From IMG/VR virus record IMGVR_UViG_3300048672_001051, positions 165,657 to 229,656 of that record: a stretch of DNA of 64,000 nt. The stretch is one strand, 5' to 3'. Position 1 is the stretch's first letter; the number at the start of each line of letters is the position of its first letter. The notes beneath the pieces are model-generated. The model searched no databases. It was not told the origin of the DNA and saw only the letters and a program-made list of their open reading frames with translations. Positions 10,597 to 63,071 of the stretch are shown one piece after another. The position numbers and the translations under genes are program-made.

Positions 10597-10598
10597 TC

Positions 10599-10982: not shown

Positions 10983-10983
10983 T

Positions 10984-11346: not shown

Positions 11347-11348
11347 GC

Positions 11349-11732: not shown

Positions 11733-11733
11733 A

Positions 11734-12132: not shown

Positions 12133-12135
12133 CAG

Positions 12136-12570: not shown

Positions 12571-12571
12571 A

Positions 12572-12964
12572 CTATAAATGCCTTAAATGCAGGTCAATCA
12601 TGTCGCCATTAATAATAAAATAACTTTTATCGAGAGTATTACTTTGTCCATGGCTTGTACCTTTAAAACGAAAGCTGTGAGTTTTAATCCAGCCGGCTGC
12701 TACACAATTACCTAGTCTTATACCTGAAGTTGTACAGTAAAATTTTCCAAAAAATTTATTTGGTACTTGGCTAAAACCTTCAGAATATTTTTTTAAATCT
12801 ACATTTTTCGTATGACAATTTTTTAAATAACGAGCTGCTTGCCAAAATACTTTAGCACTTCTTTCAATATTAATGACATTTAATAAAATTTTATAAGCTT
12901 CCTCATTTTCTTTTTTAAAGTCTGTTAAAACTTTAAAAATTTCTAACGCTTGAACTTCATTCAT
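12572..12964 (-). CDS. LRxL-array paralog
   Basis: FWQAARY, SHG, LRHL end. Confidence 0.8.
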   Translation of the reverse strand: MNEVQALEIFKVLTDFKKENEEAYKILLNVINIERSAKVFWQAARYLKNCHTKNVDLKKYSEGFSQVPNKFFGKFYCTTSGIRLGNCVAAGWIKTHSFRFKGTSHGQSNTLDKSYFIINGDMIDLHLRHL

Positions 12965-12966
12965 AT

Positions 12967-13347
12967 TTACAGATACCTGAGAGATTTGATACGATTAGGA
13001 ATACCGTTTAAATAATATTTTTTATCTATTTGGTCATAGCCGTGAAGCTCACCTTTAATATAAAAATATTCACGATTATCAAAAATAGCGCGACCAAATC
13101 TTTCGAGAGAGCTTGATAAATATCCTGGACGTCTAGACTCTGAATTAAATATAGGTCCAGCAGTGTATTCTTTTAAATCTATTTCATGTCCAGCACACGC
13201 TTTAAAAAATCTCAGTATCATCCAGTATTTTTTAAAATTGGCAGTTTTTAATGCCAATTTAAATTCGTCTTTTAGTTCACTGCCTAGCTTATGACGCGTG
13301 TCCGGAATAAGTTGAAAAATATGCTGTGCAAATAGTTCTTCTCTCAT
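12967..13347 (-). CDS. LRxL-array paralog
   Basis: YWMILRF, LHG, LRYL end. Confidence 0.8.
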   Translation of the reverse strand: MREELFAQHIFQLIPDTRHKLGSELKDEFKLALKTANFKKYWMILRFFKACAGHEIDLKEYTAGPIFNSESRRPGYLSSSLERFGRAIFDNREYFYIKGELHGYDQIDKKYYLNGIPNRIKSLRYL

Positions 13348-13799
13348 TATAACTCTCTTAGTCTTAAAGTATTTTTTAGTGCGCGATCATTTATATTGAA
13401 ACTAATACTATTATTAATACTGCAAGTCCCATGCTTCATATCTTTAAGTCTATAACTTGTACTCTCCAAGTAATAATCCAAACCTATTAGTTTAAAATCT
13501 GTTGTAAGATAACTTACAATTTTTAAATCTGTCGGTGATCTAGCCAAACCTGCAGGATATTTATTTAAAGTTTTGTCGAAATAATAAAAATAATTTGCCA
13601 AATTTAAATAGACATAACGGGTTATCTGCCAAAAACAAATAATACTTGGACTAGGAGATTTAAAAATGTAGTCTAAAATTTTACAAGCAAGCGATAATTC
13701 ATCAATATATTTTATACGAACATTTTTAAGCATTTCAGGCGTTTCTAAATATTCTTTAAAATATCTTAAGATTTTTTCAGAGTCTTCTAGTTGTGTCAT
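13347..13799 (-). CDS. LRxL-array paralog
   Basis: FWQITRY, KHG, LREL end. Confidence 0.8.
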   Translation of the reverse strand: MTQLEDSEKILRYFKEYLETPEMLKNVRIKYIDELSLACKILDYIFKSPSPSIICFWQITRYVYLNLANYFYYFDKTLNKYPAGLARSPTDLKIVSYLTTDFKLIGLDYYLESTSYRLKDMKHGTCSINNSISFNINDRALKNTLRLREL

Positions 13800-13801
13800 A
13801 A

Positions 13802-14179
13802 TTACAAATCTCTCAGTTTTAAATTAGAATTTAAAACACAATTATTTATTTTTAAAATAAATATTTTTGAAGCCTTATTAACATACACGCCGTGCATTCC
13901 ACCGTTATTTTGAAAAAATTTTAAATTAATATTGTCATATTCGCCGAAAGACCTGAGATAACTATTAAAATAATATTTTCGATTAGTGCCAGGCGATACA
14001 TACAAACCAGCTCTTGTTAGAAAATTTGGCCGTACTGGACGGCCAACATCATATTGTAATTCTCTTAAAACACCTAGGAATTTAGTTGTCTCACCGTCAG
14101 CTAACATTTTTAAACATAAAATATATGCATACGTATTTTTCGGAATATTTTGTAATAAATCTAAAAATAATATTTTCAT
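13802..14179 (-). CDS. LRxL-array paralog
   Basis: FLGVLR, MHG, LRDL end. Confidence 0.8.
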   Translation of the reverse strand: MKILFLDLLQNIPKNTYAYILCLKMLADGETTKFLGVLRELQYDVGRPVRPNFLTRAGLYVSPGTNRKYYFNSYLRSFGEYDNINLKFFQNNGGMHGVYVNKASKIFILKINNCVLNSNLKLRDL

Positions 14180-14586
14180 TATAAATGCCTTAATTCTCTA
14201 GTTTTTACATCACGGCTGTTAATAATAAAAATAAAGCCTCTCTCAATGTCAAAAACCCCATGTTTTCGACTTTGTTTGTAATGCCTTCTAGCTACACTAT
14301 TAAATTTAGCCATACCAATTACTTTGTCTTGTTTGTTTACATAATAATGATAATTACCTAATATTGATGTAGCTAAGCCTGAACGCATGTGGCCTATATC
14401 TACACCCGAAGGCTTTATAGCTTTATGGTAATTATAATGTCTAATAATCTCCCAAAATTTTTTAAAATTGTTAGTAGCAATTAAACTTTCTAATTTTCTA
14501 GTAGTTTTTTTGTCAATACTTGGTTGATTATACTCTTGTATAATTTTTAAAATTTCATAAGGATTTGTAGTAATCATTTGCCACAC
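14179..14586 (-). CDS. LRxL-array paralog
   Basis: FWEIIRH, KHG, LRHL end. Confidence 0.8.
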   Translation of the reverse strand: MWQMITTNPYEILKIIQEYNQPSIDKKTTRKLESLIATNNFKKFWEIIRHYNYHKAIKPSGVDIGHMRSGLATSILGNYHYYVNKQDKVIGMAKFNSVARRHYKQSRKHGVFDIERGFIFIINSRDVKTRELRHL

Positions 14587-14598
14587 CTTTGTTAATAT

Positions 14599-14985
14599 TT
14601 ATAAATACCTTAGATTTTTTTTGTAAAAAAAATCATTATTAATATACATGGTAGTAATATTATTCAGGAAAGCCATGCCGTGAAAATAATTATTTTTAAA
14701 AAATAAACATTCTTTATTAATACCAGTCTTGTGTAAACCTATTCTTAAGCCTAAGGAGTTAATATAAAAACTTTCATTGCCTGAGTTTAGGCTAACAAAA
14801 CCGCTTGCCTTACTTCCTAGCGGTATTTTTAAATCATAATTTTGATTAACATACCGACATACTTCCCAAAATTTTTTAGTATTATTTTGATAAATCAATT
14901 GTGATAGTATTGCAGGGTAATCTTTTAAAGTAATATACTTTTTTGTATATTTTTCAACTTCTTTTATAATTTCTAAGGGTTGCAT
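14599..14985 (-). CDS. LRxL-array paralog
   Basis: FWEVCRY, FHG, LRYL end; start placed at MQPLE. Confidence 0.8.
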   Translation of the reverse strand: MQPLEIIKEVEKYTKKYITLKDYPAILSQLIYQNNTKKFWEVCRYVNQNYDLKIPLGSKASGFVSLNSGNESFYINSLGLRIGLHKTGINKECLFFKNNYFHGMAFLNNITTMYINNDFFYKKNLRYL

Positions 14986-14987
14986 TT

Positions 14988-15383
14988 CTAGAGATTCCTT
15001 AAAGACTTTGTTGGGCATTCAGAATTATTAATATAATTTTGAAAATAAGAATTCACAGTACGAACTCCGTGTAATTTTCTATTTTTAAAAAATAATTTTG
15101 CTTTATGATGGATTGATAAACCCACCACCTTACCTTTACTATTTAAATAGTAACTACTAGATAAGTTATGCATACAAGCTAAGCCCACTAAACGTGGGCC
15201 TGTAATATATTTTAAATCAAATTCATTTTTTAAATATCTGTACAGTTCCCAAAATTCTTTAACATTTTTAGTAGTACTTAAAAGATTGTAAACATAATGA
15301 TTACAGTCAGCAGGATCTTTTAAAATTAATTTTAAAAGATCATATATTTCAATAATTTCGTGTTGTTCAATTGTCTTAGTCAC
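14988..15383 (-). CDS. LRxL-array paralog
   Basis: FWELYRY, LHG, LRNL end. Confidence 0.8.
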   Translation of the reverse strand: MTKTIEQHEIIEIYDLLKLILKDPADCNHYVYNLLSTTKNVKEFWELYRYLKNEFDLKYITGPRLVGLACMHNLSSSYYLNSKGKVVGLSIHHKAKLFFKNRKLHGVRTVNSYFQNYINNSECPTKSLRNL

Positions 15384-15752
15384 TTATAAATACCTTAAGC
15401 TCCGCCATGTCAGTAAATTGCCTTTAAGCCAGAATTTATGAAATCTATCATCGCAACCATGCCTATAGCCTTGACAATAAAAAACTCTATCTCGAGAGTT
15501 TCTTGCAAATCCAAATTCTCTAGCTTCTCTATTAATATAACTTAAAAAATTAGAATTAGAGTTATAAATTTTACCAGCAGTATACTCACCTAAAATTAAA
15601 TTAAACTTTTCTGTTTTTTTAATTCTACGAGCTACACTCCAAAATTCTTTAAAATTTTGGTTAAGAAGACATTCTTGCAAAAGTCTAGTGTCAATATGGT
15701 AACTAAATCTTAAGTGGTCTAAAACATTTTTAGCTGATTCTAATTCAGTCAT
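15384..15752 (-). CDS. LRxL-array paralog
   Basis: FWSVARR, RHG, LRYL end. Confidence 0.8.
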   Translation of the reverse strand: MTELESAKNVLDHLRFSYHIDTRLLQECLLNQNFKEFWSVARRIKKTEKFNLILGEYTAGKIYNSNSNFLSYINREAREFGFARNSRDRVFYCQGYRHGCDDRFHKFWLKGNLLTWRSLRYL

Positions 15753-15753
15753 A

Positions 15754-16230
15754 TCATAAATACCTTAGCCTAGTCACATTACTTCGTATTCCATCAATAT
15801 AAAAATCAGGTGCATTGAATCTTTTATATGCGCCATGTCTAATATTATTTTTAAAATAACATGATTCATTATCAGACCTTTGACACAGACCTATCATGCC
15901 ACTATTTTTTAATTTATAATAAAAATTATTATAACGCATAAACTTACCATTAAAATAATGTTGTAAGTTTATTTCAGGGCAATAAGAAGTACTAATATAT
16001 TTTATTTTAGGCCAAAAATTTTTGGTATTATTGTCTGATAGAGCATTTTTAAAAAGTCGCAAAATATCTACAGACTTTAAAGATCTTTGATAAACAGTTC
16101 TAACTATATCTTCACGAGTGTGACACTTTTTTAAAATTTCTTTTGTATTACAAGGATTGTAAAAAAAAGGAAAAGGACTTGGTGACAATATGGTTGAATA
16201 AGCCATAGACGTAATATCTGTAGGGTACAT
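15754..16230 (-). CDS. LRxL-array paralog
   Basis: FWPKIKY, RHG, YIDG, LRYL end. Confidence 0.8.
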   Translation of the reverse strand: MYPTDITSMAYSTILSPSPFPFFYNPCNTKEILKKCHTREDIVRTVYQRSLKSVDILRLFKNALSDNNTKNFWPKIKYISTSYCPEINLQHYFNGKFMRYNNFYYKLKNSGMIGLCQRSDNESCYFKNNIRHGAYKRFNAPDFYIDGIRSNVTRLRYL

Positions 16231-17154: not shown

Positions 17155-20100
17155 TTACATACCTAAACTTTTCATTAGTGCATCTAAGTCATCTGGCGGA
17201 ACGTTACCATTTGAATTAGCGCCTTCTTGAATGTTAAGGTCACTAAACTCTTCAGGATCTGCACAGAAAGCCTCAAATTTCTGACGGATCTCGAAAAGTT
17301 TTGAAACAAGTGAACCGAAATATGTGTTTTCAGAAATGAATGTCTCCCACATTTTCAATTCACTTTCGTCTACCGGAATTCGACCCTTATTGTATAAAGA
17401 GATAAAATTCCGACAACCTTTTAAAGCCTTCGAATGAGAACCCCAAGTGATAATAAACAAAAGTTTATTAATATCACCAAGGGTCATCCGATATTCAGGT
17501 TTTTGCAATTCAGCAATAATAATCTTACGATTTTCAGGCAATGCCATATTGCGCAGAAAGAACATTTCAAAGTCCTTACTACCATTTTTGGCATGCTTAA
17601 TTGCTTCAATAACTTTTTCCTGAACCAAACGAGTATAAGCAAAAGAGAATTGTTTAAATTCTAAATCGCTAAGGGGCTGCAATAAAACAGGGTTAGGGAC
17701 ATTAGCAGTTTTGTATAAACCTTTATTTGCGACAAAGAATGCTTGATAACACTGCATTAAAGCAGTAGCAGTCCAAATGTCTAGGGTGGCAGGGCCAATA
17801 TTAGCTTTAGCAACAGAGGCATTAAGCAAATACTGTTGATAGCATGGAATGCCATTTTGAGGTGCCATTGGAACTTTGTTCAGTTTATAAACATGTTGAC
17901 CAATAGGTAACAACTTGTTAGTTGTTTCATACTCACCATCAATATACTCTTCATTCCAACATAATTCTTGCTCAAGAGGTTGAGGCCGAACAAATCGACG
18001 AAGAATTTCTTGACCAATTGGATTAGGAATAGCTAATGGTAGAGCATCACCATCACAATCACTTCGTGCTTCCAAAGCAATAGTAGGGCTGATTAACAGA
18101 ATGTCACTATTGTACCGAGGATTCAAATACGCGTGCAAATCAATATTATGCACTGTCTTCAAATACATTCGGAACAAGTTAACATCCCAAATACGAGGTA
18201 CTTGTAGCTGCATTTCCCAAAGTACAGGATTACGCACTGCTAAGCTACGAGGAACTTCGTTTAAAGCACGATCTACAGCTTGTTTGTCTAAAGTGCCATG
18301 CTCATTTAAACGCGCTAAGATGTCAATCTGAGAACTAACAAGACGTTCCCAATCATCACCAAAGGCTTCATTCGAGATACGTTCAAATTTAGACTGACTC
18401 ATAACAACAACAACATCAGGTGGTAGATAATGATCAACTACCTGTTTCATACCAAAGCCTTTCATACGAGGCTTGATAAGATGTTGAATTACCATTTGAG
18501 CGGCTTCTTCGTCTGAATAAAGCGTCGATTTAACTGCACGCAAATACTCGTCTAAAGCATAAGACTGTTGTCGATTGTTGTCAGGCATTAACATGTTTCG
18601 GAAAACTTTATTATACCCTTTCAGGTATTTATAGTTTTCACGAACAAGTCGCAAAATCTTAGACAATCGAATTAAAATGTCTGGATAATTTGTTTCGCCA
18701 CTCATAAGTCGACCAGTAAACCGGTTCAACAAATAAGCACTAGGCATCCGGACACAAGGGCCGCCGAGAGAGCTGAAATCCAAATAAAAACCATTCGGAT
18801 TATATTCAGCATTTAACAAGCGAGAATTAGATGGAAAAATTGCCTTCTTTGTTAATACAAAGTCGTCAGGTCCATACATAGGATTCTTACTAATTAAATC
18901 GGCAGGGGTGATAATTGGAAGTTCATCAACTTCTGAAAATACAGCGCGATCATCTGTTAGAATTTTAAACAATTCATAAACAGCTTTAATAGAATCAGGA
19001 TCACGATAACTTTCAAAAATATGATTTGCAAGTTCAAGCGATACGCCACCTTGGAATGTTAACATCTTCAAGGTTTCAAACATTACAGATTGAGGTTTCC
19101 AATCTGCGTAGATGTCAGTAATTTCAGTGTAGTTGATATAGACAAGTCCAATCTCAACGTTAACTTCATTACCAAAATTATCTACATATTTGTATTCAGG
19201 CAAAGACTGAGACGCAGCATTAATTTCAGCTTCATCCAATGAATTTAAATAGCCTGAATTACCACGTTTAACACTGGGTTTATAGTAGCCCAGCTTAACA
19301 GCTAGAGCAGCTCGTGCTAAAACAATGGTGTTTGATGCAGCTTTAACAGCATTCATACCAGTAACAATGTCCGGTACGAGAAAATCTTTTTCATTCCAAG
19401 TGTTATCTGTCGAGGAATCTCCAAGATATTCAGAAGCATTTGGATAACGTTCAGCAATAGCAGAGTCATCAAAAACATTCTTAAACATAATCTTACCAGT
19501 ATTGGTAAGAACTTTAGTAACACCTTTAAGTCCGGTGCTACTTGTGATACGGCAGTTACCTGCACGGCAAATACCTTTAAAACGAATTTTAAAAGAATTT
19601 GCAATGCTTGTCGCATCAATAGAAAGTACAGTAATGGTTTTAAAATTGTACAAGTCGATAGGACTTGACAAGTTATTCAACCCAACTGTAAATGTTTTAA
19701 AAGAAGGCTGATAAGTCTTGCCAGCTTCTACTAAAACTTCAGAAAAAATTTCTTCAATACTGAAAGAAACTTCTAAAGCTTGAGCTGCAATAGTTGCTGC
19801 AATTTCAATTTCACCGGAAACAAAACGTTTAGTGTCTGGGTCCATTGGATGAAATACAATAAAAGCTTCACGTTGGCAATCGTCTTTACGAGTAAAGACG
19901 TCACCATTAATGATATAATCCTGTGTAAAAACAGAATTACTAGGGTTTTCAATCTTTAGATGCTCTCCTAAAGAATGAGTTTTAAGACGAGCAGCTAACG
20001 ACTGTTTATTATCGAAAATAGTCAAGATCGAAGGAACTGTATCTCGAAGATTTTCAGAATAACCTGTGTTGCGAAACATAAAAGGCTGTTCACCTGTAAA

Positions 20101-20778
20101 CAGGCTAACAGTAGCAGTTTTAGACATACTACCTTCAGATGTCAGATGAATCTGACAATCACGGATAATATTTGGCCAATCTTTTTCACGAGGTTGTGAA
20201 TTAGAAATAATTTGGCCAAGAACAAACTTACCATTATTGATTTTGTCCAGATGTTGATTAAAACTAAGAATAACAAAAGAATGTTCAGATTTTTTCTGAG
20301 CATTAAAACTTACAGGCTTGGTATAATTTGCAAAAGACTGCAAATTATTAATATCAGTGTTTAACAAACCTGTATAGATGTCTTTGCTGTACTGTTGATA
20401 CATATTAAGACGATCTACTAAAATAAGATAAAATACTTGATTTTGATTAAGAATCAAATAATTATGATGACCAAAATAATCAATTCGACTATTAGAAGTC
20501 GAGCTGACTTCTACGAGAAAAGGATAATACGTTGTCTGCACTGGTGCAGTGCTAGGTGAAAACAATGTTTTACGAATAATAACTTCCATTGCATGAGTAT
20601 CACTGCGAGGGAAAGCTATAATAACATCATCATCAGCATTAATAGAATAATTGCACAGCCCACTGTAACCTTGAGGCAGGTGTCCAATAAGTTCTTCAGC
20701 TGTGCAATTTGCCGGAATATCACGAAAGGCTTGTGTGCGTACAATACCATCCAAACGTGCAATCGGAAATGAAGACAT
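17155..20778 (-). CDS. Single-chain two-barrel DNA-directed RNA polymerase 2 (putative)
   Basis: 1207 aa. RSDCDGD, AVRNPVL (beta'-like RxP), GNCRITSSTGLKGV (resembles beta GDKxxxRHGxKGV), KANIG and LVQEKVIEAIKH. Confidence 0.8.
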   Translation of the reverse strand: MSSFPIARLDGIVRTQAFRDIPANCTAEELIGHLPQGYSGLCNYSINADDDVIIAFPRSDTHAMEVIIRKTLFSPSTAPVQTTYYPFLVEVSSTSNSRIDYFGHHNYLILNQNQVFYLILVDRLNMYQQYSKDIYTGLLNTDINNLQSFANYTKPVSFNAQKKSEHSFVILSFNQHLDKINNGKFVLGQIISNSQPREKDWPNIIRDCQIHLTSEGSMSKTATVSLFTGEQPFMFRNTGYSENLRDTVPSILTIFDNKQSLAARLKTHSLGEHLKIENPSNSVFTQDYIINGDVFTRKDDCQREAFIVFHPMDPDTKRFVSGEIEIAATIAAQALEVSFSIEEIFSEVLVEAGKTYQPSFKTFTVGLNNLSSPIDLYNFKTITVLSIDATSIANSFKIRFKGICRAGNCRITSSTGLKGVTKVLTNTGKIMFKNVFDDSAIAERYPNASEYLGDSSTDNTWNEKDFLVPDIVTGMNAVKAASNTIVLARAALAVKLGYYKPSVKRGNSGYLNSLDEAEINAASQSLPEYKYVDNFGNEVNVEIGLVYINYTEITDIYADWKPQSVMFETLKMLTFQGGVSLELANHIFESYRDPDSIKAVYELFKILTDDRAVFSEVDELPIITPADLISKNPMYGPDDFVLTKKAIFPSNSRLLNAEYNPNGFYLDFSSLGGPCVRMPSAYLLNRFTGRLMSGETNYPDILIRLSKILRLVRENYKYLKGYNKVFRNMLMPDNNRQQSYALDEYLRAVKSTLYSDEEAAQMVIQHLIKPRMKGFGMKQVVDHYLPPDVVVVMSQSKFERISNEAFGDDWERLVSSQIDILARLNEHGTLDKQAVDRALNEVPRSLAVRNPVLWEMQLQVPRIWDVNLFRMYLKTVHNIDLHAYLNPRYNSDILLISPTIALEARSDCDGDALPLAIPNPIGQEILRRFVRPQPLEQELCWNEEYIDGEYETTNKLLPIGQHVYKLNKVPMAPQNGIPCYQQYLLNASVAKANIGPATLDIWTATALMQCYQAFFVANKGLYKTANVPNPVLLQPLSDLEFKQFSFAYTRLVQEKVIEAIKHAKNGSKDFEMFFLRNMALPENRKIIIAELQKPEYRMTLGDINKLLFIITWGSHSKALKGCRNFISLYNKGRIPVDESELKMWETFISENTYFGSLVSKLFEIRQKFEAFCADPEEFSDLNIQEGANSNGNVPPDDLDALMKSLGM

Positions 20779-49368: not shown

Positions 49369-49646
49369 CCATTAGCCACAGCCCAGTCTCGAGCTGCCTC
49401 AACAGTCTGGAAAGTGTTAAAGGCTACTTTGCTGTAGCCTTTTGAGCGGAAAGGAGAGCACAAATACGTGCTCAAAATTCCTTTAACATGGAGAGTGAAT
49501 ACACCTTCACTCTCTTTCCGGACTATGAATCCGTTAAAACTCCAAGTTTCCATAATGAAACTCCTTAATAAGAACAGGCTCATTACACCTGTACACACTT
49601 TTGGAATGGAGAGTGTGCAAAAGAACTCCAAGGAATTATTCCACAT
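49353..49646 (-). CDS. Hypothetical protein
   Basis: Probable start METWS after TAAGGAG. Confidence 0.55.
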   Translation of the reverse strand: MWNNSLEFFCTLSIPKVCTGVMSLFLLRSFIMETWSFNGFIVRKESEGVFTLHVKGILSTYLCSPFRSKGYSKVAFNTFQTVEAARDWAVANGWGSL

Positions 49647-51124: not shown

Positions 51125-54100
51125 TTAAGCTTGTAAAGCTTGGATTAAACGGTACATCATTGACTCTGTATACATGTCGTATACTTTGCCATCAATGACC
51201 GCACCTTCAGCATCTTTCAACAAGACAAAGTTACTTGTCAATGGTGATTGATCGCTGAACATCAACGCATCGAGGGATGGTGCGCTCAAGTGCAAGGCAG
51301 CTACTTGACGCATCACTGCCATGAACTTAGCGCAGAACTGGTCTACGCTCATGTTCAATGAGCTGAAGTTGAACAGCAAGCCATTTGTGAAAACATCCAC
51401 AACAGCCTCTTTAGCCGCAGCTAGCCGGGCGATATACTCATCACGGCTTTCATCTTTTTTCTGCAAGATGAAACCAGGACGTATTATCTCGCTGACAGCC
51501 AGCTTCGAGCCAAGGCTTGAATGCTTCATGCCGTTCATAGCCTCTTCCTGCACCAACACACCAATTACGTATGCAACGGTGTTAAAGAATTCCTCATGCA
51601 TAGCTGCAGGAATGTCCGCCAATCCTTTACCATCCATACGTACAGAAGTATGGTATGTGAAGAATCGTTGTAGGTTCTTGGTATAAGAACCTACGTTGGC
51701 TTTCGCATCAGCAGATTCCTTGATAGTTGCAAACAACTCAACCCAAGAGAACTGATTAACGCTTGCGCCGCCAAAGCCAAGAGCGTTCATCTCTTTGGCC
51801 AGGTAGTTTTGATGCCACTTAGCAGCGAAGTACTTATCATCAAGCACCTTAGCTTCAAAAGTGTTCAACTTCACTTTACCATGTGAAGTCAAGCGAACCA
51901 AGTCACCGTCTGCATCATTTTGCAATGATAACAAGTAGTTAGCTGGCGCGAACACCGCGCAGTTGAAGATCTCAGCCATGTCTTTGTTCAACATGTCTTC
52001 TTCTACGAAGTTGGCCTCGGCTTCAGCTGCGATGCGCTTAGCTTTCAGGTAAGCGTTGCTGTCACGGCCTTGACCAGCTTTTTCAAACTTGGCGTTGGCC
52101 CGGTTAAGCTGTTGCAGCGCGTGGTGACGCTTAGGCAGCTTACTGTGTACCATCATACCAGTTTGTAGCTCTGGCATGATTACAGGATGCTTGGTAGCCA
52201 GCATTGTGCCACCATTACGCATGGCCAGGCACCACAGCTCATTGGCTTTAGAAGCCCAAGGAGCGCAGATCAAAGCGCCATACATACCCTCAACTTTCAG
52301 GCGACCCAACTGCTTACCCAAGATCTCGCATTGGGTGTATTGGAGCATGTTGACCGAGAAGTTCTCGACAAATGCTCCGATTGTTGGTTTGGCTTTTAAG
52401 TTCAAGGTGTACTCATCAACCTCATACTGACCAACCAGACCGCGAACGGCCTTGAGGAAGGTGTTAAAGTACCCTTGACTTTGAATCATTGTTGCATAGG
52501 CAGATGTTTCAGCCATATTCCCACAAAGGATGCGTTGCCCTGTTAAGTAGGTCAGTGGTGTACCTGCCTTGTCAGTCAACTCAACCCAACGTACATTAGG
52601 ATCGTTGATACCTAATACACAGGCAACGTCCACAAAGAACGCGCGGTGAACATACCCTTCACCTAATGTGTCTAGGTCTAGCCCATATGTTGCCACCAAA
52701 CGGGCGATCTTACCAACAACAGAAGCTAGTGGTAGTGTATATACCCCAGCGGCTGTTTTGTCGCTCAGACGACCCTGCACCCAATCTAGGGCCATGTTGA
52801 CGTCGTCTTTCTTGTCAGAATTAAGCTCGAGAGACATTGCATGTTGCAGCATGTCTTGAACCATCTGTTGGCCGTGAGTGGTACGCATCATGTCGAACTC
52901 GCTCGACACGACGTTAACCACTTTTGGTTTGCGAGTGATAACACCAGACTCGCGCAACTCACGTAGCGCATCTGGCAGTGGAGCCATAGAGCCAGCGTCT
53001 GCCAACTCTGCGACTTTGTTAAACACGACAGCTATCAGCAATGGATCATCGCCAATGATGTCATGTTTCTTATACGCTGCTTCCAACAACTTAGCAGCGT
53101 TATCAATGTAGCTGTTGACCACAAAGTCACGGTCAACAAACTTATAACCATGACTAATTGTGTAATGGTTAGTCGCAACCATCTGTACATCGTTCAGCAC
53201 ACAGACTTCGACCTCAAGTCCGTTGATCTCAACAACTTCCCAAATTGAGTTCAACTCGGTTGGATCGTTGATGATGTCCATAACTTCGCAGTTAGGATGT
53301 TTGGCTTGATACAGACCAGCCAAACCACCTTTATATGAAGCTTTTGAAGCCAGAGATACGCCAGCATCAGCCAAGTCTTTATCGACAAAACCTGCCCATG
53401 AGAGGGTTGACTTAATCAAGCCTTCGGTATTATCGCCAACAGCACGACAGAAACCAACTGTCAGCATTGTATCGCTGTCAGCCAAAATATTACCTGCCAC
53501 AAGAGCGTTACGCAGCTCAGTGGCAGTCTTAAGGTTGCGCTTGGCAACAGCTTTAGCCTTACCGGCTTTAGACGCCTTTACAGCGTCGTAGGCAGCTGTT
53601 GCAGCGTCAAGTGCTACGTTAGGGTCACGCAACACCCAAACCTCACCAAAGGCGAATCCGACGCCGTCCTTATTGCACAGCTTCTCAAAGCGAGAAGCTG
53701 TGTGCTTGATGCTCAAGGCTGACAGCAGTGAACCATCAGCTTGTTCAGTCAGCATGTAGCCTAACTGTTCATGCTCACGAATGTAACCGTCAGCAGCGTG
53801 GCTGCCAGATACCAAGCCATAAACACCTGGCTTGAAATGCTCCAGATACTGGTTTACAGGGTACTTACTGTAAACCATTGGATGTGAAACGGGTGTAACA
53901 GCACCGTTCGCTGCGCGAAGTACGAGGTGCTTCGCTGGATCAGCGATCAGCGCTTCGTAAGACAGGTTGCCAGCGCGCAGGAGGATCAATTTCTCGATCC
54001 AACTCAAGCTCATGAGCTTGATATTAAAGCCACGAGCACCAGTGTCGTGAAACACATGGATACGGCTCAGCGCATCAACCACTTCAGCAGTGGTATTACT

Positions 54101-54760
54101 GCTAGTGATCTTGACACTAGCTTGAACAAAGCCTAGCACAGATTCAACTGCACTGTACTTCATTGCAGTGGCCTTCATGCCATGACCTAGGCGGATATTA
54201 ACACCACCTTTGTCAAACTGAGGCTTTTCCGCAATGTTACGGCGGAAAGCCTCAGCCATCGGCTGAATTGGGTACGAGTCCAATTGGCCCGCGCACTTCA
54301 CAGCCCACTCTATTAGAGCGAGCTTGTCATCTGTCAAGCCGTGACCGAAATAGACCAACACTTTGGCGATGGAGTTAGAGTACTCCAGGCCACGGGTGTT
54401 GACGAATATTGAATAAAGCTCAAGCATCGCCCGAGCCTTGTTCAAACCTCCGACAACTTCTAGGTCCTCCTGATCCAATTCCACTTTCGTGAAACCAGAT
54501 ACAGCAGGGGCGTTAATGACACGCAAGATGTCACCCTTCGCAACGGCCATTGATTCTACATAGTAGAACTCTTTGGCCATGTGCTGGATGGTGGCATCCA
54601 GCTTATCGCGGTCGACAAGGTGTGGGTACACCTCAGCACGGTCTTTTTTGGAGCCGGAAACATAGGCCAAAACAGCGGCCTTGTTGGACCAGTTCAGGAC
54701 TGATTGATACATAGCTGTGGTCTTCATGGTTGAAGTTCCTTTGGTGGTTGAGTTAGTCAT
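51125..54760 (-). CDS. Single-chain two-barrel DNA-directed RNA polymerase 1 (YonO/QDE-1-like fold, putative)
   Basis: 1211 aa. Catalytic-type QNDADGD, upstream ATKHP (RxP-like), beta-like RAVG..GLIKS, C-terminal KANVG and LVQEEAMNGMKH shared with 17155-20778. Confidence 0.75.
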   Translation of the reverse strand: MTNSTTKGTSTMKTTAMYQSVLNWSNKAAVLAYVSGSKKDRAEVYPHLVDRDKLDATIQHMAKEFYYVESMAVAKGDILRVINAPAVSGFTKVELDQEDLEVVGGLNKARAMLELYSIFVNTRGLEYSNSIAKVLVYFGHGLTDDKLALIEWAVKCAGQLDSYPIQPMAEAFRRNIAEKPQFDKGGVNIRLGHGMKATAMKYSAVESVLGFVQASVKITSSNTTAEVVDALSRIHVFHDTGARGFNIKLMSLSWIEKLILLRAGNLSYEALIADPAKHLVLRAANGAVTPVSHPMVYSKYPVNQYLEHFKPGVYGLVSGSHAADGYIREHEQLGYMLTEQADGSLLSALSIKHTASRFEKLCNKDGVGFAFGEVWVLRDPNVALDAATAAYDAVKASKAGKAKAVAKRNLKTATELRNALVAGNILADSDTMLTVGFCRAVGDNTEGLIKSTLSWAGFVDKDLADAGVSLASKASYKGGLAGLYQAKHPNCEVMDIINDPTELNSIWEVVEINGLEVEVCVLNDVQMVATNHYTISHGYKFVDRDFVVNSYIDNAAKLLEAAYKKHDIIGDDPLLIAVVFNKVAELADAGSMAPLPDALRELRESGVITRKPKVVNVVSSEFDMMRTTHGQQMVQDMLQHAMSLELNSDKKDDVNMALDWVQGRLSDKTAAGVYTLPLASVVGKIARLVATYGLDLDTLGEGYVHRAFFVDVACVLGINDPNVRWVELTDKAGTPLTYLTGQRILCGNMAETSAYATMIQSQGYFNTFLKAVRGLVGQYEVDEYTLNLKAKPTIGAFVENFSVNMLQYTQCEILGKQLGRLKVEGMYGALICAPWASKANELWCLAMRNGGTMLATKHPVIMPELQTGMMVHSKLPKRHHALQQLNRANAKFEKAGQGRDSNAYLKAKRIAAEAEANFVEEDMLNKDMAEIFNCAVFAPANYLLSLQNDADGDLVRLTSHGKVKLNTFEAKVLDDKYFAAKWHQNYLAKEMNALGFGGASVNQFSWVELFATIKESADAKANVGSYTKNLQRFFTYHTSVRMDGKGLADIPAAMHEEFFNTVAYVIGVLVQEEAMNGMKHSSLGSKLAVSEIIRPGFILQKKDESRDEYIARLAAAKEAVVDVFTNGLLFNFSSLNMSVDQFCAKFMAVMRQVAALHLSAPSLDALMFSDQSPLTSNFVLLKDAEGAVIDGKVYDMYTESMMYRLIQALQA

Positions 54761-57366: not shown

Positions 57367-57552
57367 TTAAGCTGCAAGAGCTTTGATGGCCATTTGATGA
57401 TCAATCATCGCCTCAGCAGCATCGTGCAGATGCTCAGACAATAATGACCAGTCGATTAGTTGATCTTTAGTGTTACAATCAACGGCGTAGGTAACGAAGT
57501 TCAACAAAGGAAGAAAATCCTTTGCTGAAACTTTAACTGCGCAGGCCAGCAT
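57367..57552 (-). CDS. Hypothetical protein
   Basis: TAATG overlap with the upstream gene; AAGG SD. Confidence 0.55.
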   Translation of the reverse strand: MLACAVKVSAKDFLPLLNFVTYAVDCNTKDQLIDWSLLSEHLHDAAEAMIDHQMAIKALAA

Positions 57553-58334
57553 TATGCTGCTACCTTCAAGGCAGCACGCAGGGAGCGGCTTGTAAGAGCC
57601 GCTGCGTTTGCACTCAAGCCATATACCGCCTCAAAGTCGCTGGCAGCCAGAGCTGCTTTCTTACTCAGAGCTGCAACGCGTGCAGCTCCTGCTTTGGTGA
57701 CAACACCACCGTCTTGGGCCGCAACCCACACGAGGTGGGCGCGGGCCTTTTCAGCACGCTTGACCATACGCAGGATTTCTCCTGCGGTTTTGACAGCTTC
57801 TGCTGTCAGTTTACGAGCAGCTGGCGTTGCAGCTTTGACAGCTGCAACTTTAGCTTTTGGTACATACACTTCCGCCGCAAGACGGTGGGTGTACACGTTT
57901 CGACGTACATCCCGGGCTTTGAAGCCAGTGCCACGTTTGGCACGTTTGGCTGCCTTGATGCCACAAGCGTGGCTGCCTGTCGCAGCGATTGCTGCGACCA
58001 CTGCCTTACGGCGAGCGGTTACAACCTCACGGGCGCTGTGCCCGTACTTAGCCGCAACAGCGGCGCTTGCGGCCTTACGGGCTACATTACGTGCAGCACG
58101 TGCAGCAGCGCTGGCTATGTTGCCAGCACGGGTTTTGCTACCGTCCGAACGACGGTTACGTTTGGTGCGTGCTGCGTTACGAGCAGCCTTGCGAGCTGCT
58201 CCTTCAAGTGCACCGTCAATGATGCTTGGGTAAACCCAAGCACCAGCAACTTCGTTAACAAGTTGGGTGTCAAAATCGACACCCATGATGACTGCGAGTA
58301 GTGCAAGCACTGACTCGATGAAGAAATTTTCCAT
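57552..58334 (-). CDS. Very basic Ala/Arg/Lys-rich early protein (histone H1-like composition)
   Basis: AARKAARNAAR-type repeats; AAGGAG SD before MENFF; hydrophobic N-terminus. Confidence 0.7.
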   Translation of the reverse strand: MENFFIESVLALLAVIMGVDFDTQLVNEVAGAWVYPSIIDGALEGAARKAARNAARTKRNRRSDGSKTRAGNIASAAARAARNVARKAASAAVAAKYGHSAREVVTARRKAVVAAIAATGSHACGIKAAKRAKRGTGFKARDVRRNVYTHRLAAEVYVPKAKVAAVKAATPAARKLTAEAVKTAGEILRMVKRAEKARAHLVWVAAQDGGVVTKAGAARVAALSKKAALAASDFEAVYGLSANAAALTSRSLRAALKVAA

Positions 58335-58409
58335 GATTTTGCTCCTTAACAATGAGGTTGGGATCATTAAACCCAAACTGCCTAGTACAGTGGGATAGGA
58401 TAACTAGGA

Positions 58410-58464
58410 TGCTGTTTCGTCCTTGATTGGACTCATCAGTTAGGCAAAGAAGCCTAATACAGCA
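58410..58464 (-). ncRNA. Hammerhead ribozyme, type III (HH-A)
   Basis: Minus strand reads UGCUGU A | UUAGGC uucuuu GCCUAA CUGAUGA GUCC aaucaa GGAC GAA ACAGCA. Complete CUGAUGA/GAAA core, GUA cleavage triplet, three perfect stems. Predicted cut between 58458 and 58457. Confidence 0.93.
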
Positions 58465-58502
58465 GGTAGTTTTTTATAGAAGCATACCTAGGCTTCTCTC
58501 TC

Positions 58503-58670
58503 TTATTTAAGCGCGAGGATTTCTCCTGTGCGCTTAATGAAGAACAGATTAAACCCAACAACTTCCGAAGAAGTTGTTGGGTTGACAATGCTAGCTACGA
58601 ACACGCCTTGGCCGTGCACGGCCAAGGCGTGTGTGTAGTCAGCGACTACGCGAACTTTTGGCTTGTTCAT
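58503..58670 (-). CDS. 55-aa early protein between HH-B and HH-A (not in ORF track)
   Basis: AAGGAG SD; MNKPKVRVVADYTHALAVHGQGVFVASIVNPTTSSEVVGFNLFFIKRTGEILALK. Confidence 0.65.
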   Translation of the reverse strand: MNKPKVRVVADYTHALAVHGQGVFVASIVNPTTSSEVVGFNLFFIKRTGEILALK

Positions 58671-58755
58671 ATGATTTTCTCCTTGAATGAAAGGCTCATT
58701 ACACCTTATCTCTACCTAGTATCGAGATGAATTTATCTAGGATGCTGATGTTACA

Positions 58756-58829
58756 TGTTTGCCTCATCAGTGCATAAGGAACAACCTATATGCAGACGCC
58801 CTTATAAGAATCTATAAGGGCGTTTCGGC
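58756..58829 (-). ncRNA. Hammerhead ribozyme, type II (HH-B)
   Basis: Minus strand: GCC GAAA CGCCCUUAUA gauucu UAUAAGGGCG UC | UGCAUAuAGG uuguu CCUUAUGCA CUGAUGA GGC aAACA. GUC triplet, cut 58795/58794. Loop I UGUU can pair with the 3' tail AACA. Confidence 0.9.
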
Positions 58830-58830
58830 C

Positions 58831-59247
58831 TTATTTCTGGAGCTTATCTAGCTCCTCAGCGAGGAGGTCGCTAAGCTCAACTTTGATCAGCGCTAGCTGA
58901 TCAAGACGGGTGTGGTGACGCGCGTGATACGCGTCATTGAGGGCCTCTTGATGTTCCTTGCGGAACGAGGTCGTAACCTCCTCATGGTAGTACGAGTGGA
59001 GTTTGTACACCAAACTTATTGCATCCTCTCGGGATGCAATTGCAGTGAGAGCCCATTCACGGGCCATCAGCGAACGGCCAGTATTAAGACGGTCAAGACC
59101 GTCACGGACAGCAGCCTCGTACAGTGCTTTGCGAGCAGCGCTCGCATTGTCACGGATGGCGGTGGTACGTTTGGCGTTGCTTGGAGCAACCTCCAGAATA
59201 ATGACGAGCAATGCCAACAACAAGAGTACAACACAATATGACAACAT
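58831..59247 (-). CDS. Membrane-anchored early protein between HH-C and HH-B
   Basis: N-terminal hydrophobic segment; AAGGA SD. Confidence 0.7.
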   Translation of the reverse strand: MLSYCVVLLLLALLVIILEVAPSNAKRTTAIRDNASAARKALYEAAVRDGLDRLNTGRSLMAREWALTAIASREDAISLVYKLHSYYHEEVTTSFRKEHQEALNDAYHARHHTRLDQLALIKVELSDLLAEELDKLQK

Positions 59248-59280
59248 AATGGTATTCCTTTGGTAAGACAGTGATAGACA

Positions 59281-59344
59281 GGTTTGCCTTCATCAGTGCA
59301 TGAGTAACCAACTCATACAGACCTTACAATGTAAGGTTTCGGCA
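59281..59344 (-). ncRNA. Hammerhead ribozyme, type II (HH-C)
   Basis: Minus strand: UGCC GAAA CCUUAC auu GUAAGG UC | UGUAUGAGU ugguu ACUCAUGCA CUGAUGA A GGCA AACC. GUC triplet, cut 59320/59319. One extra A after the core; loop I GGUU can pair with tail AACC. Confidence 0.88.
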
Positions 59345-59388
59345 CAACCCTTTACTTATATACCACCAAGGGTTGGGTGGTCAGTGGA

Positions 59389-59460
59389 TCATTTGTACTC
59401 AGGGAAGAGTACTTTGATCCACTGCTCGTTCTCTAGAACGAGGATTTGAATTTGGTCCAT
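59389..59460 (-). CDS. 23-aa leader ORF (putative)
   Basis: AGGAG SD; MDQIQILVLENEQWIKVLFPEYK. Confidence 0.45.
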   Translation of the reverse strand: MDQIQILVLENEQWIKVLFPEYK

Positions 59461-59762
59461 GACTGGACTCCTATTCAGGTATTGAATCATGTTTGATTAG
59501 GCAATGATCCTTAGCCTTTGAAACGGGGGTAGGGGGCTCAACAGATGGTACCCCCCTATGTTTCCGAGGGTACCCACCCTATACAACACCTAGTCCACAA
59601 AAATAAAAATATTATTTTTAAGATTTTTTAAAGGAATTTTTTAAAGGAAACAAAAATATTTGGGGGTGGGGGCTAAAAACTAACTTTATCTTTGTATGCT
59701 ATCAACTTATTTCAAAAATAATATTTATATAAAATAATAACTATATAAGTATTATTTATACA

Positions 59763-62315: not shown

Positions 62316-63071
62316 ATGACAGCATATATAAATAATGATGTATACACATCACACTTTTTTACAGCATTATCAACAATGTTCCCAGATGGTGAATTGTTTT
62401 TTGTAGAGGCAGTACGAGCAGTACGAGACTTAGTAAAAACACCTGAACTAAAAGAAGACATTAAAAGATTTATTAAACAAGAAGCTATGCATCGAAAAGA
62501 GCATACTAAGTTTAATAAGATGTGGTGGGAGTTAGGCTACAGAACAGACAAGCTAGAGGCTGCAACACGAGCACTTCTTGGCTTGTCTAAAAAGCTTAAG
62601 TTGAGTAACAAATCTAACTTAGCTATAACTGTAGGTTTAGAACATTTTACAGCCACATTATCAGCTATGTTTTTAAGTACAGCAGAACTTAGAGATGGAC
62701 TAGACGATAAATATAAAGACTTATGGCTTTGGCACACTTCAGAAGAAATTGACCACAAGTCAGTAGCTTTTGAAGTGTACCAAGAAATTTTTGGAGATGA
62801 CTCAAACGTATCTGCTTATTTATATAGAGTTCTCTATATGACTCTAGTTACAATAGCTATATTAATAGCTGTACACAAATATACATACACGCTACTTAAA
62901 GATGATAATACAAATACTGTATTAACTATTTTAAAAGGCTTGAACAAAACTTGGGGTGTAAATGGGTATATCTCTAAACTAATTCCAGATATCTTGGATT
63001 ATTATAGACCCGGTTTTCACCCTGCAGATCATGACCACAGAGAGCTTTTAATAAAGTACTTTAAAGGATAA
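62316..63071 (+). CDS. Predicted metal-dependent hydrolase (ferritin-like diiron, PF10118-like)
   Basis: ALSTMFPDGELFF, QEAMHRKEH, LEHFTA, WHTSEEIDHKSVAF, PGFHP. Confidence 0.85.
   Translation: MTAYINNDVYTSHFFTALSTMFPDGELFFVEAVRAVRDLVKTPELKEDIKRFIKQEAMHRKEHTKFNKMWWELGYRTDKLEAATRALLGLSKKLKLSNKSNLAITVGLEHFTATLSAMFLSTAELRDGLDDKYKDLWLWHTSEEIDHKSVAFEVYQEIFGDDSNVSAYLYRVLYMTLVTIAILIAVHKYTYTLLKDDNTNTVLTILKGLNKTWGVNGYISKLIPDILDYYRPGFHPADHDHRELLIKYFKG

What the first reader, a model, noticed from the sequence alone, without database searches (positions are those of the whole stretch)
58410..59344. Three hammerhead ribozymes cut the phage's earliest transcript into single-gene RNAs
Seen: three co-oriented minus-strand hammerheads with full cores (CUGAUGA, GAAA, GUC/GUA) and paired stems, one in each of three consecutive intergenic gaps at the start of the minus-strand run. 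HH-B begins 1-2 nt after the stop of the 138-aa gene. Predicted cuts at 59320/19, 58795/94 and 58458/57 release a 525-nt RNA (138-aa ORF) and a 337-nt RNA (55-aa ORF). Established: hammerhead cleavage leaves 5'-OH and 2',3'-cyclic phosphate ends, 5'-OH RNA is a poor RNase E substrate, and T7 splits its early mRNA with host RNase III. Inference: a host-independent, self-processing early operon that matures and stabilises the messages, including the long RNA leading to RNAP1.
Basis: partly seen in the sequence, partly recalled or inferred. Interest (0 to 1): 0.95.

Follow-up and report, generated by a model that had tools for sequence, protein, structure and literature searches.

The report
Three hammerhead ribozymes punctuating a phage operon
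Three genuine-looking self-cutting hammerhead RNAs sit between the first small genes of a long gene run in an uncultured 230-kb phage, and related phages have them at the same places; such ribozyme clusters were already described and tested in prophages in 2011, so this is a good new example, not a new kind of thing.

Summary
A descriptor search finds exactly three complete hammerheads in 64 kb, all on the minus strand within 935 nt (about 0.013 expected per window). HH-A (59276-59346) and HH-B (58750-58832) are type II and have the loop I/3'-tail pseudoknot typical of that type. HH-C (58410-58464) is type III. The predicted cuts (59320/19, 58795/94, 58458/57) and ORF coordinates are correct.

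None reaches an Rfam gathering score. However, a covariance model built from 56 type II hammerheads of other viral contigs scores HH-B at 56 bits and HH-A at 53 bits. All three fold into the canonical junction.

Four groups of related contigs carry hammerheads at the same places. Their stems covary and type II and III are interchangeable.

HH-A has an extra A after CUGAUGA. This variant occurs in 40 of 126 viral type II pattern matches.

That one transcript is cut into short gene-length RNAs follows directly if the genes are co-transcribed. "Earliest transcript", "stabilises" and "RNAP1" remain inferences.

Perreault et al. 2011 already described, and tested in vitro, triple hammerhead arrangements flanking single genes in prophages, with the same hypothesis. 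Verdict: new member of a known kind.

New here is the setting: a conserved intergenic module flanking variable small ORFs, at the head of an operon with an RNAP-like gene.

The parts
59276..59346 (-). HH-A, a type II hammerhead. It has an extra A (59289) between CUGAUGA and stem II, a GUC cleavage triplet with the cut at 59320/59319, and a 4-bp pseudoknot (loop I GGUU with tail AACC).
   Evidence: 52.6 bits, E 2.8e-11 with independent model R1; MFE is the canonical junction. L140 has an orthologue with the same loop and tail and with compensatory changes in the stems.
58750..58832 (-). HH-B, a type II hammerhead that starts 1-2 nt after the stop codon of the 138-aa ORF. GUC triplet with the cut at 58795/58794, a 12-bp stem III, and a pseudoknot (UGUU with AACA).
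   Evidence: Rfam Hammerhead_II 35.4 bits, gathering score 37; 56.1 bits, E 3.7e-12
58410..58464 (-). HH-C, a type III hammerhead. GUA triplet with the cut at 58458/58457. Stem lengths I/II/III are 6/4/6 bp.
   Evidence: Rfam Hammerhead_3 28.8 bits, gathering score 48.5; family covariation. Orthologues in L139, L004, L006, L140 and L144.
59389..59460 (-). Possible 23-aa micro-ORF with an upstream AGGAG, in the leader that HH-A would cut off.
   Evidence: Read from the sequence; not tested further.
58831..59247 (-). 138-aa ORF with a hydrophobic N-terminus, between HH-A and HH-B. No family match.
58503..58670 (-). 55-aa ORF between HH-B and HH-C, with a strong AAGGAG Shine-Dalgarno. It contains two perfect 14-bp hairpins.
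58478..58497 (-). 6-bp hairpin followed by an A-rich stretch, 13 nt upstream of HH-C. After cleavage it would lie near the 3' end of the upstream RNA. The same kind of hairpin precedes hammerheads in L004, L139 and L140.
58715..58742 (-). UCCUAG-N17-CUAGG element shortly downstream of HH-B. Part of the conserved 5'-UTR module.
   Evidence: 2 matches, 0.11 expected; 77-84% nucleotide identity to the L140 modules
58381..58409 (-). UCCUAG-N18-CUAGG element abutting the 3' end of HH-C.
   Evidence: the 5'-UTR is 99% identical to L139, while the hammerhead itself is 75% identical
58691..58707 (-). 5'-UTR stem-loop with the conserved loop UGUAAUGAG and a covarying stem, upstream of the Shine-Dalgarno of the 55-aa ORF. 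A variant lies at 58358-58376 upstream of the 260-aa ORF, and another copy at 49574-49592.
   Evidence: (5 matches, 0.96 expected)
57552..58334 (-). 260-aa ORF, the first gene of the conserved core (260, 61, 728, 153, 1211 and 142 aa). It lies on the long 3' product of HH-C.
59583..59595 (-). GACTAGGTGTTGT block at the boundary between the AT-rich region and the G+C-rich leader, conserved in L004 and L140. It may mark the transcript start or a DNA end.

Best explanation
The three elements are functional self-cleaving hammerhead ribozymes, two of type II and one of type III. Each is built into a conserved intergenic module at the head of a ~59-kb co-directional gene run in an uncultured 230-kb phage.

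Transcribed as part of one leftward RNA, each ribozyme would fold and cut itself as it is made. The products would be:
1. a ~275-nt leader;
2. a 525-nt RNA carrying the 138-aa ORF;
3. a 337-nt RNA carrying the 55-aa ORF;
4. a long RNA that starts at 58457 and carries the conserved core genes, including the RNAP-like 1211-aa gene.

Each 3' product would begin with a 5'-OH directly at the stem I hairpin. Each 5' product would end in a 2',3'-cyclic phosphate, either just after a hairpin (stem III in the type II ribozymes) or 13 nt after a separate conserved hairpin (upstream of HH-C).

The likely effect is that each small, lineage-specific ORF gets its own message with defined, structured ends and a standard 5'-UTR, independent of host RNases and of neighbouring sequence.

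Shown here: motif identity, covariation, positional conservation and geometry. Inferred: co-transcription, cleavage in vivo, early timing, and any effect on stability or translation.
For: Motifs and chance: exactly three descriptor hits in 64 kb against 0.013 expected.

Folding: all three minimum-energy folds are the canonical three-way junction, with z-scores of -2.4, -4.1 and -3.6.

Independent model: built from 56 type II hammerheads of other viral contigs, it hits only HH-B (56.1 bits) and HH-A (52.6 bits) in the window.

Type II tertiary contact: both have a 4-bp pseudoknot directly after stem II. It covaries (GGUU/AACC against UGUU/AACA) and recurs with other sequences in relatives. This matches the criterion in PMC3088659.

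Type III family alignment: 100% of cells paired, all six stem I pairs changed on both sides, and two compensatory pairs in stem II.

Orthology: relatives share the gene order 260-61-728-153-142 aa. They carry hammerheads directly upstream of the 260-aa homologue and between small upstream ORFs:
- L004/L005/L006, type III;
- L139, type III, differing from HH-C in stem I, stem II and the cleavage triplet, next to a 99% identical 5'-UTR;
- L140, one type II and one type III;
- L144, four hammerheads on one strand around a 1330-aa homologue of the 1211-aa protein.

The inserted nucleotide of HH-A occurs in 40 of 126 viral type II pattern matches.

Precedent: triple hammerhead arrangements in prophages cleave in vitro at all sites, and one does so in E. 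coli (PMC3088659). Type II hammerheads cleave in vivo in Desulfovibrio vulgaris (PMC8782182).
Against: - No Rfam gathering score is reached, and HH-A gets no Rfam hit even at E<10.
- Model R1 was trained on sequences selected with an 18-nt pattern taken from HH-A and HH-B, so part of its score is circular.
- There is no transcript evidence: the promoter, co-transcription and timing are unknown. Sigma-70-like matches are no more frequent than chance.
- Pseudoknots of only 4 bp and stems II of 3-4 bp are at the weak end. In PMC3088659, shortening a pseudoknot from 6 to 4 bp cut the rate about 20-fold.
- The conserved 5'-UTR module after each ribozyme could itself contain a phage promoter. In that case the genes need not be co-transcribed.
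Confidence: 0.72

Rival explanations
1. Cassette junction or natural insulator. The unit under selection is the whole conserved intergenic module: 3' hairpin, hammerhead, UCCUAG..CUAGG element, UGUAAUGAG stem-loop and Shine-Dalgarno. It lets unrelated small early genes be swapped in by recombination within the module. The ribozyme gives every newcomer the same 5' end and UTR, whatever lies upstream. Cleavage still happens, but the point is modularity rather than stability.
For: - The ORFs between hammerheads are unrelated among relatives: 138 and 55 aa here; 91 and 92 aa in L004; about 57 aa in L006; 51, 60, 55 and 52 aa in L140; 62 aa in L144.
- The modules are 77-99% identical in nucleotides between phages, including L140, whose 260-aa homologue is only 37% identical to the window's.
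- Between the window and L139, identity drops from 99% (UTR) to 75% (hammerhead) to about random (upstream). That places a recombination breakpoint at the ribozyme.
- Types II and III are interchangeable at equivalent gaps.
Against: No recombination event was observed directly. Few lineages were sampled. This is compatible with the main explanation rather than exclusive of it.
Confidence: 0.3
2. Each gene has its own phage promoter inside the conserved module downstream of the ribozyme. The hammerhead only severs read-through RNA from upstream, defining 3' ends in place of a terminator. It would not be dividing a true polycistronic message.
For: - A 45-75-nt sequence is repeated upstream of several genes and strongly conserved between distant relatives, as phage promoters are.
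- The UCCUAG/CUAGG arms form an inverted repeat that could be a protein-binding DNA site.
- One copy of the UGUAAUGAG stem-loop motif lies far from any hammerhead, at 49574-49592.
Against: The stem of the UGUAAUGAG hairpin covaries (AAGG/CCUU, UUGGG/CCCAA, ACAGG/CCUGU, UAGG/CCUA). That points to an RNA-level element. No promoter consensus is known for this phage.
Confidence: 0.15
3. Cleavage shortens rather than lengthens message life. The ribozymes expose 5'-OH ends that the host degrades, as with glmS, where cleavage of the mRNA is followed by degradation by cellular RNases. Expression of the first genes would then be brief and self-limiting.
For: The glmS precedent: cleavage followed by degradation by cellular RNases lowers expression (PMC6765202). 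The host is unknown, so its RNase set cannot be excluded.
Against: After cleavage each 5' end is the first base of a stable hairpin, and hairpins lie at or near the new 3' ends. This looks protective.
Confidence: 0.12
4. The ribozyme-flanked 525-nt and 337-nt RNAs are ligated into circles by a host RtcB-type ligase, which joins 5'-OH to 2',3'-cyclic phosphate ends.
For: The end chemistry fits. PMC3088659 raised the idea.
Against: PMC3088659 looked for circular or spliced products and found none. Nothing in the sequence brings the two ends together.
Confidence: 0.04
5. The motifs are chance matches or decayed relics without activity.
For: Rfam scores are below threshold. HH-A has a core insertion.
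Against: About 0.013 hits are expected per window against three observed. There is covariation and positional conservation in four groups of related contigs. The insertion is a common natural variant.
Confidence: 0.03

Closest known systems
Clustered hammerheads in prophages (Perreault et al. 2011, PMC3088659): triple arrangements in Agrobacterium tumefaciens (flanking ardA), Clostridium scindens and Azorhizobium caulinodans
   Same: [quoted passage not shown] The type II members have the loop I/3'-tail pseudoknot. The proposed role is the same: cutting long phage transcripts into operon-length or gene-length mRNAs. Those examples cleaved at all sites in vitro, and one did so in E. coli.
   Different: - This one is in an uncultured ~230-kb virus contig, not a prophage of a known bacterium.
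- It sits at the head of a very long co-directional gene run that includes RNAP-like genes.
- The position is conserved across a clade.
- It is embedded in a larger conserved module of hairpins and 5'-UTR.
- No activity data exist.
Rfam Hammerhead_II (RF02276) and Hammerhead_3 (RF00008)
   Same: Core sequence, three-helix junction, circular permutation and pseudoknot.
   Different: Scores are below the curated thresholds (35.4 against 37; 28.8 against 48.5; no hit for HH-A), so standard annotation would miss all three. HH-A carries an extra nucleotide after A9.
RNase III processing of the T7 early transcript (from established knowledge, not tested here)
   Same: A polycistronic early phage RNA is cut in intergenic hairpin regions into gene-length mRNAs whose ends are structured.
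   Different: T7 uses a host protein enzyme and leaves 5'-phosphate and 3'-OH ends. Here the RNA would cut itself and leave 5'-OH and 2',3'-cyclic phosphate ends.
Synthetic ribozyme insulators such as RiboJ (from established knowledge)
   Same: A self-cleaving ribozyme placed before a standard UTR removes variable upstream RNA, so expression no longer depends on context.
   Different: Those are engineered parts. This would be a natural counterpart, and that is unproven.
CChMVd (+) hammerhead with an extra nucleotide in the catalytic core (De la Pena & Flores 2001, listed in the references of PMC2632901; details recalled from memory)
   Same: An extra residue between A9 and G10.1, as in HH-A, is tolerated by an active natural hammerhead.
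   Different: That one is a viroid type III ribozyme. HH-A is a phage type II.

Membership tests
Hammerhead ribozyme (all three) | Three helices meeting at a junction, with helices I and III flanking the cleavage site | tested here: met
   Descriptor hits give stem lengths I/II/III of 9/4/7 (HH-A), 6/3/12 (HH-B) and 6/4/6 (HH-C). The minimum-energy and centroid folds are this junction for all three.
Hammerhead ribozyme (all three) | Conserved core: C3-U4-G5-A6-N7-G8-A9, G12-A13-A14, an A15.1-U16.1 pair, a G10.1-C11.1 pair, and H17 (not G) at the cut | tested here: met
   Read: CUGAUGA and GAAA are present in all three, with triplets GUC, GUC and GUA. HH-A has one extra A between A9 and G10.1. 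The same kind of insertion is seen in 40 of 126 viral type II pattern matches (35 U, 4 A, 1 G).
Hammerhead ribozyme, type II | Pseudoknot of four or more pairs between loop I and the nucleotides immediately 3' of stem II (PMC3088659) | tested here: met
   HH-A has GGUU/AACC and HH-B has UGUU/AACA, 4 bp each, and they covary. Relatives have 4-5 bp with other sequences. In the viral set, 59 of 81 parsed members have 4 bp or more.
Hammerhead ribozyme (all three) | Covariation supporting the helices in homologues | tested here: met
   Type III alignment A2: 100% paired, with 8 pairs changed on both sides. HH-A against its L140 orthologue shows compensatory changes in stems I and II and a completely different stem III. 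HH-C against L139 and L144 has different stems I and II; the L144 copy also keeps HH-C's loop I sequence.
Rfam RF02276 / RF00008 | Bit score at or above the curated gathering threshold | tested here: not met
   HH-B 35.4 against 37. HH-C 28.8 against 48.5. HH-A has no hit at E<10. Orthologues in relatives score 45-47.5 against 48.5.
Hammerhead ribozyme (all three) | Site-specific self-cleavage giving 5'-OH and 2',3'-cyclic phosphate ends | not testable with these tools
   Needs in vitro transcription or end-specific RNA sequencing.
Prophage-type hammerhead cluster (PMC3088659) | Several co-oriented hammerheads close together, flanking individual genes or short gene blocks in phage DNA | tested here: met
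   Three within 935 nt flank a 138-aa and a 55-aa ORF. The same arrangement occurs in L004, L140 and L144. Unrelated viral contigs also have 2-4 per locus: L013, L019, L021, L022 and L074.
   - NDADGD lies at residue 949. The motif QNDxDGD is invariant or nearly invariant in 36 homologues.
- The AlphaFold model has a mean pLDDT of 77.
- The best PDB fold hit is a phage P32 gp64 RNA polymerase entry, but only at E 0.027 with a low TM-score. Other phage RNAPs appear further down the list at E>1.
- No Pfam, PHROG or PDB sequence match.

The most novel reading that the evidence does not exclude
The hammerheads belong to a portable junction cassette: 3' hairpin, ribozyme, two conserved 5'-UTR hairpins and a Shine-Dalgarno. 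A clade of large phages would use it as a natural insulator and recombination scaffold. Unrelated small genes are slotted in at the first-transcribed end of the genome. Each is automatically released as its own message with identical ends, whatever ribozyme type happens to occupy the junction.
Probability: 0.3. Interest if true: 0.65.

Novelty: new member of a known kind. Interest (0 to 1): 0.45.

Why it matters
A 2019 review still calls the biological role of bacterial and phage hammerheads "largely elusive" (PMC6765202). This locus offers a clean comparative system:
- the same gaps are filled by type II or type III ribozymes in related phages;
- the genes between them are interchangeable;
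- the flanking hairpins and UTR are conserved.

That makes the processing and insulation hypothesis directly testable with a 1.3-kb fragment. It also shows that curated Rfam thresholds miss all three ribozymes here and their orthologues in relatives, so such clusters are probably under-annotated in viral metagenomes.

Tried and rejected
- Rfam at gathering thresholds found nothing in the window.
- blastn of the 4-kb region and tblastn of the 1211-aa protein against 50,697 phage records gave no match.
- Pfam and PHROGs gave no match for the 55, 138, 153, 260/274, 728, 1211, 1207 and 521-aa proteins. The PDB sequence search gave nothing for the two ~1200-aa proteins.
- The IMG/VR protein search returned only the window's own contig.
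- L012, a 243-kb contig with a similar type III hammerhead, shares no proteins with the window and was dropped as a relative.
- The fold search of the 1211-aa model found no significant match.
- The last 35 nt of the contig occur only once in it, so no terminal repeat was found and the genome ends remain unknown.
- An alignment and consensus fold of the G+C-rich leader from three phages was inconclusive.
- Sigma-70 promoter and intrinsic terminator scans were not above shuffled controls near the start of the operon.
- The metagenome pattern scan gave four unrelated chance matches among its eight hits.
- The Logan contigs that all start 96 nt upstream of the 263-aa gene looked like possible RNA ends. 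They are explained by a 31-mer assembly break inside a sequence shared by two hammerhead copies.
- The ~37 ORFs of similar size at 248-16230 looked like paralogues, but one pair tested shows no BLASTP similarity.
Full report
**What the window is.** The window is the last 64 kb of IMG/VR contig IMGVR_UViG_3300048672_001051, which is 229,656 bp long. Nearly all sizeable ORFs from 248 to 59247 lie on the minus strand. A short divergent plus-strand block follows from 59857. G+C falls from about 0.50 near the start of the minus-strand run to 0.26-0.29 at its far end. The phage is very novel. There was no nucleotide or protein match in 50,697 phage records. The proteins around the finding gave no Pfam or PHROG hit.

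**The observation.** Reading the minus strand confirms three complete hammerheads at the stated places.
- HH-A (59276-59346) and HH-B (58750-58832) are type II, meaning stem II is the open helix.
- HH-C (58410-58464) is type III.
- All carry CUGAUGA, GAAA, the A15.1-U16.1 pair and a non-G at position 17.
- The 138-aa ORF ends at 58831, 1 nt before HH-B's first paired base.

A descriptor of my own found these three and nothing else on either strand. It required CUGANGA, GAAA, U-H, stems I and III of at least 4 bp and stem II of at least 3 bp, and allowed one inserted base after A9. 300 first-order Markov simulations of the window gave a mean of 0.013 hits. Each element folds on its own into the canonical junction as its minimum-energy and centroid structure.

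**Why Rfam is silent, and whether that matters.** No Rfam family reaches its gathering score anywhere in the window. With relaxed thresholds HH-B scores 35.4 bits against Hammerhead_II (threshold 37). HH-C scores 28.8 against Hammerhead_3 (threshold 48.5). HH-A is not reported.

I therefore built a model from 56 type II hammerheads taken from other viral contigs. In the window it hits only HH-B (56.1 bits, E 3.7e-12) and HH-A (52.6 bits, E 2.8e-11). The training set was selected with an 18-nt pattern derived from HH-A and HH-B, so part of that score is circular. The stems are not.

HH-A's oddity is an extra A between CUGAUGA and stem II. This is a common natural variant: 40 of 126 viral type II pattern matches carry one extra base there (35 U, 4 A, 1 G). 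Two unrelated viral contigs, L035 and L080, have a stem I and tail identical or nearly identical to HH-A's, with a different stem III. An extra core nucleotide has a published precedent in a viroid hammerhead (a reference listed in PMC2632901; the details are from memory).

Both type II elements can form a 4-bp pseudoknot between loop I and the bases directly 3' of stem II. The two pseudoknots differ by compensating changes (GGUU/AACC against UGUU/AACA). This is the tertiary contact that Perreault et al. defined for type II hammerheads and showed to be needed for fast cleavage (PMC3088659). Four pairs is the low end. In their construct, shortening the pseudoknot from 6 to 4 pairs cost about 20-fold in rate.

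**Relatives.** The 260-aa protein just downstream of HH-C has homologues at 36-37% identity on metagenomic contigs. These contigs share the gene order 260, 61, 728, 153 and 142 aa with the window.
- L004, L005 and L006 have type III hammerheads directly upstream of the 260-aa homologue and between the small ORFs before it. They score 45-47.5 bits in Rfam.
- L139 is a closer relative (728-aa protein 66% identical, 153-aa protein 93%). Its type III hammerhead is at the same place as HH-C. The 5'-UTR after it is 99% identical to the window's. The ribozyme itself is only 75% identical, with a different stem I, a compensatory change in stem II and GUC instead of GUA. Further upstream the sequence is unrelated.
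- L140 has a type II hammerhead that is a clear orthologue of HH-A: same loop I and tail, an inserted U, and compensatory changes in stems I and II. It also has a type III hammerhead, each in a gap between small ORFs. A third gap holds a 19-bp perfect hairpin instead.
- L144 has four hammerheads on one strand, two type III and two type II. They divide an operon that contains a 1330-aa homologue of the window's 1211-aa protein. Its first ribozyme shares HH-C's GUA triplet and loop I sequence, while stems I and II are different but still paired.

An alignment of 17 type III members, including HH-C, has every cell paired. All six stem I pairs are changed on both sides, and two stem II pairs are compensatory. 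Together this is strong comparative evidence that the structures are under selection. It also shows that what is conserved is 'a self-cleaving ribozyme in this gap', not a particular sequence or permutation.

**The wider module.** The ribozymes are embedded in a larger conserved intergenic unit.
- A short hairpin followed by an A-rich stretch precedes HH-C at 58478-58497. The same kind of hairpin precedes hammerheads in L004, L139 and L140.
- A UCCUAG-N17/18-CUAGG element follows HH-B and HH-C. It occurs nowhere else in the window (2 matches against 0.11 expected) and is present in all relatives.
- Next comes a stem-loop with a conserved 9-nt loop (UGUAAUGAG) and a covarying stem, then a strong Shine-Dalgarno.
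- This UTR is 77-84% identical in nucleotides to the L140 modules, although L140's 260-aa homologue is only 37% identical to the window's.
- The ORFs between the ribozymes are unrelated from one relative to the next.

The geometry means that after cleavage every 3' product starts with a hairpin at its first base. Every 5' product ends at or near a hairpin.

**Mechanism.** A leftward transcript is cut by its own ribozymes into a leader, two single-gene RNAs and a long RNA carrying the conserved core genes. I found no convincing intrinsic terminator on the minus strand between HH-C and the 1211-aa gene.

Several further steps are inference:
- Co-transcription. No promoter was identified, and the conserved module could itself hold a phage promoter.
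- Early timing. Support is limited to position at the head of the gene run, a conserved GACTAGGTGTTGT block at the boundary between the AT-rich and G+C-rich regions, and one relative's contig (L005) that begins with an Illumina adapter fused directly to that block. The adapter junction hints at a physical DNA end. The window's own contig shows no terminal repeat.
- Stabilisation. The hairpin-capped ends fit it. However, the host is unknown, and in the glmS case cleavage leads to degradation (PMC6765202).

'RNAP1' is plausible but unproven. The 1211-aa protein and its 35 aligned homologues keep a QNDxDGD motif. A confident model (pLDDT 77) finds a phage P32 gp64 RNA polymerase entry as its best PDB match. 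That match is only E 0.027 with a low TM-score.

**Comparison with what is known.** Perreault et al. [quoted passage not shown] They proposed that long phage transcripts are processed into operon-length or single-gene mRNAs. They showed complete cleavage in vitro for three triple arrangements, and in E. coli for one that flanks ardA (PMC3088659). A 2019 review restates this hypothesis and calls the biological roles largely elusive (PMC6765202).

My own scans show how ordinary the motifs are in viral contigs. Several unrelated contigs carry two to four hammerheads within 1-2 kb. The finding is therefore a new member of a known kind.

What is added here:
- positional conservation across a clade of large, otherwise unannotatable phages;
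- interchangeability of ribozyme types at one gap;
- the conserved hairpin and UTR module;
- the variable gene content between modules.

These suggest a natural insulator or cassette-junction role, which I rate at about 0.3.

**Verdict.** Novelty is modest and interest is 0.45. Nothing in this work called for a referred step.

Noticed in passing
window 58691-58707, 58358-58376, 49574-49592; L004 ~3715-3735; L140 ~275-292 and ~993-1010: A 5'-UTR stem-loop with a conserved 9-nt loop (UGUAAUGAG; variants UUUAAUGAU and UGUAGUGAG) and a covarying 4-5 bp stem, 12-20 nt upstream of the Shine-Dalgarno. It looks like a protein-binding RNA operator. The motif gave 5 matches against 0.96 expected.
   Followed up: partly
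window 58381-58409 and 58715-58742; all relatives: A UCCUAG-N17-19-CUAGG inverted repeat right after the hammerheads, found nowhere else in the window. It could be an RNA hairpin, an operator or part of a phage promoter.
   Followed up: partly
window 59583-59595; L004 ~2733; L140 ~151; L005 1-60: The conserved block GACTAGGTGTTGT sits at the boundary between an AT-rich repeat region and a G+C-rich structured leader. Contig L005 begins with Illumina adapter sequence fused directly to ATGACTAGGTGTTGT, which hints at a physical genome end or packaging cut there.
   Followed up: partly
window 58552-58583 and 58601-58632: Two perfect 14-bp hairpins, one with a UUCG loop on the minus strand, lie inside the 55-aa ORF. 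Small ORFs between hammerheads in L004, L006 and L140 also contain strong hairpins, often with stable tetraloops.
   Followed up: partly
L140 1243-1289: In one relative, the gap where a hammerhead would be expected holds a 19-bp perfect hairpin instead. This may be an RNase III-type processing site doing the same job.
   Followed up: no
window 248-16230: About 37 back-to-back minus-strand ORFs of 120-160 aa lie in DNA of only 26-29% G+C, against 44-50% at the hammerhead end. No Pfam match for three members, and one pair tested shows no BLASTP similarity.
   Followed up: partly
window 51125-54760 and 17155-20778: Two proteins of about 1200 aa each carry a DxDGD motif (NDADGD at residue 949, SDCDGD at residue 907). 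The first belongs to a family of about 40 cluster representatives of 1000-1500 aa with an invariant QNDxDGD motif. They are probably divergent two-barrel RNA polymerases. The fold search was not significant.
   Followed up: partly
L139 301-2634: In this close relative, the first ~96 residues of the 260-aa protein are fused in frame to the 728-aa protein. The rest of the 260-aa gene and the 61-aa gene are missing.
   Followed up: no
window 62316-63071 (+): This gene in the divergent block gave one of only three Pfam matches among the 24 window proteins scanned: PF10118, predicted metal-dependent hydrolase, E 5.6e-73.
   Followed up: no
L013, L019, L021, L022, L074: Unrelated viral contigs carry two to four compact hammerheads within 1-2 kb, so clustered hammerheads are common in IMG/VR.
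   Followed up: no
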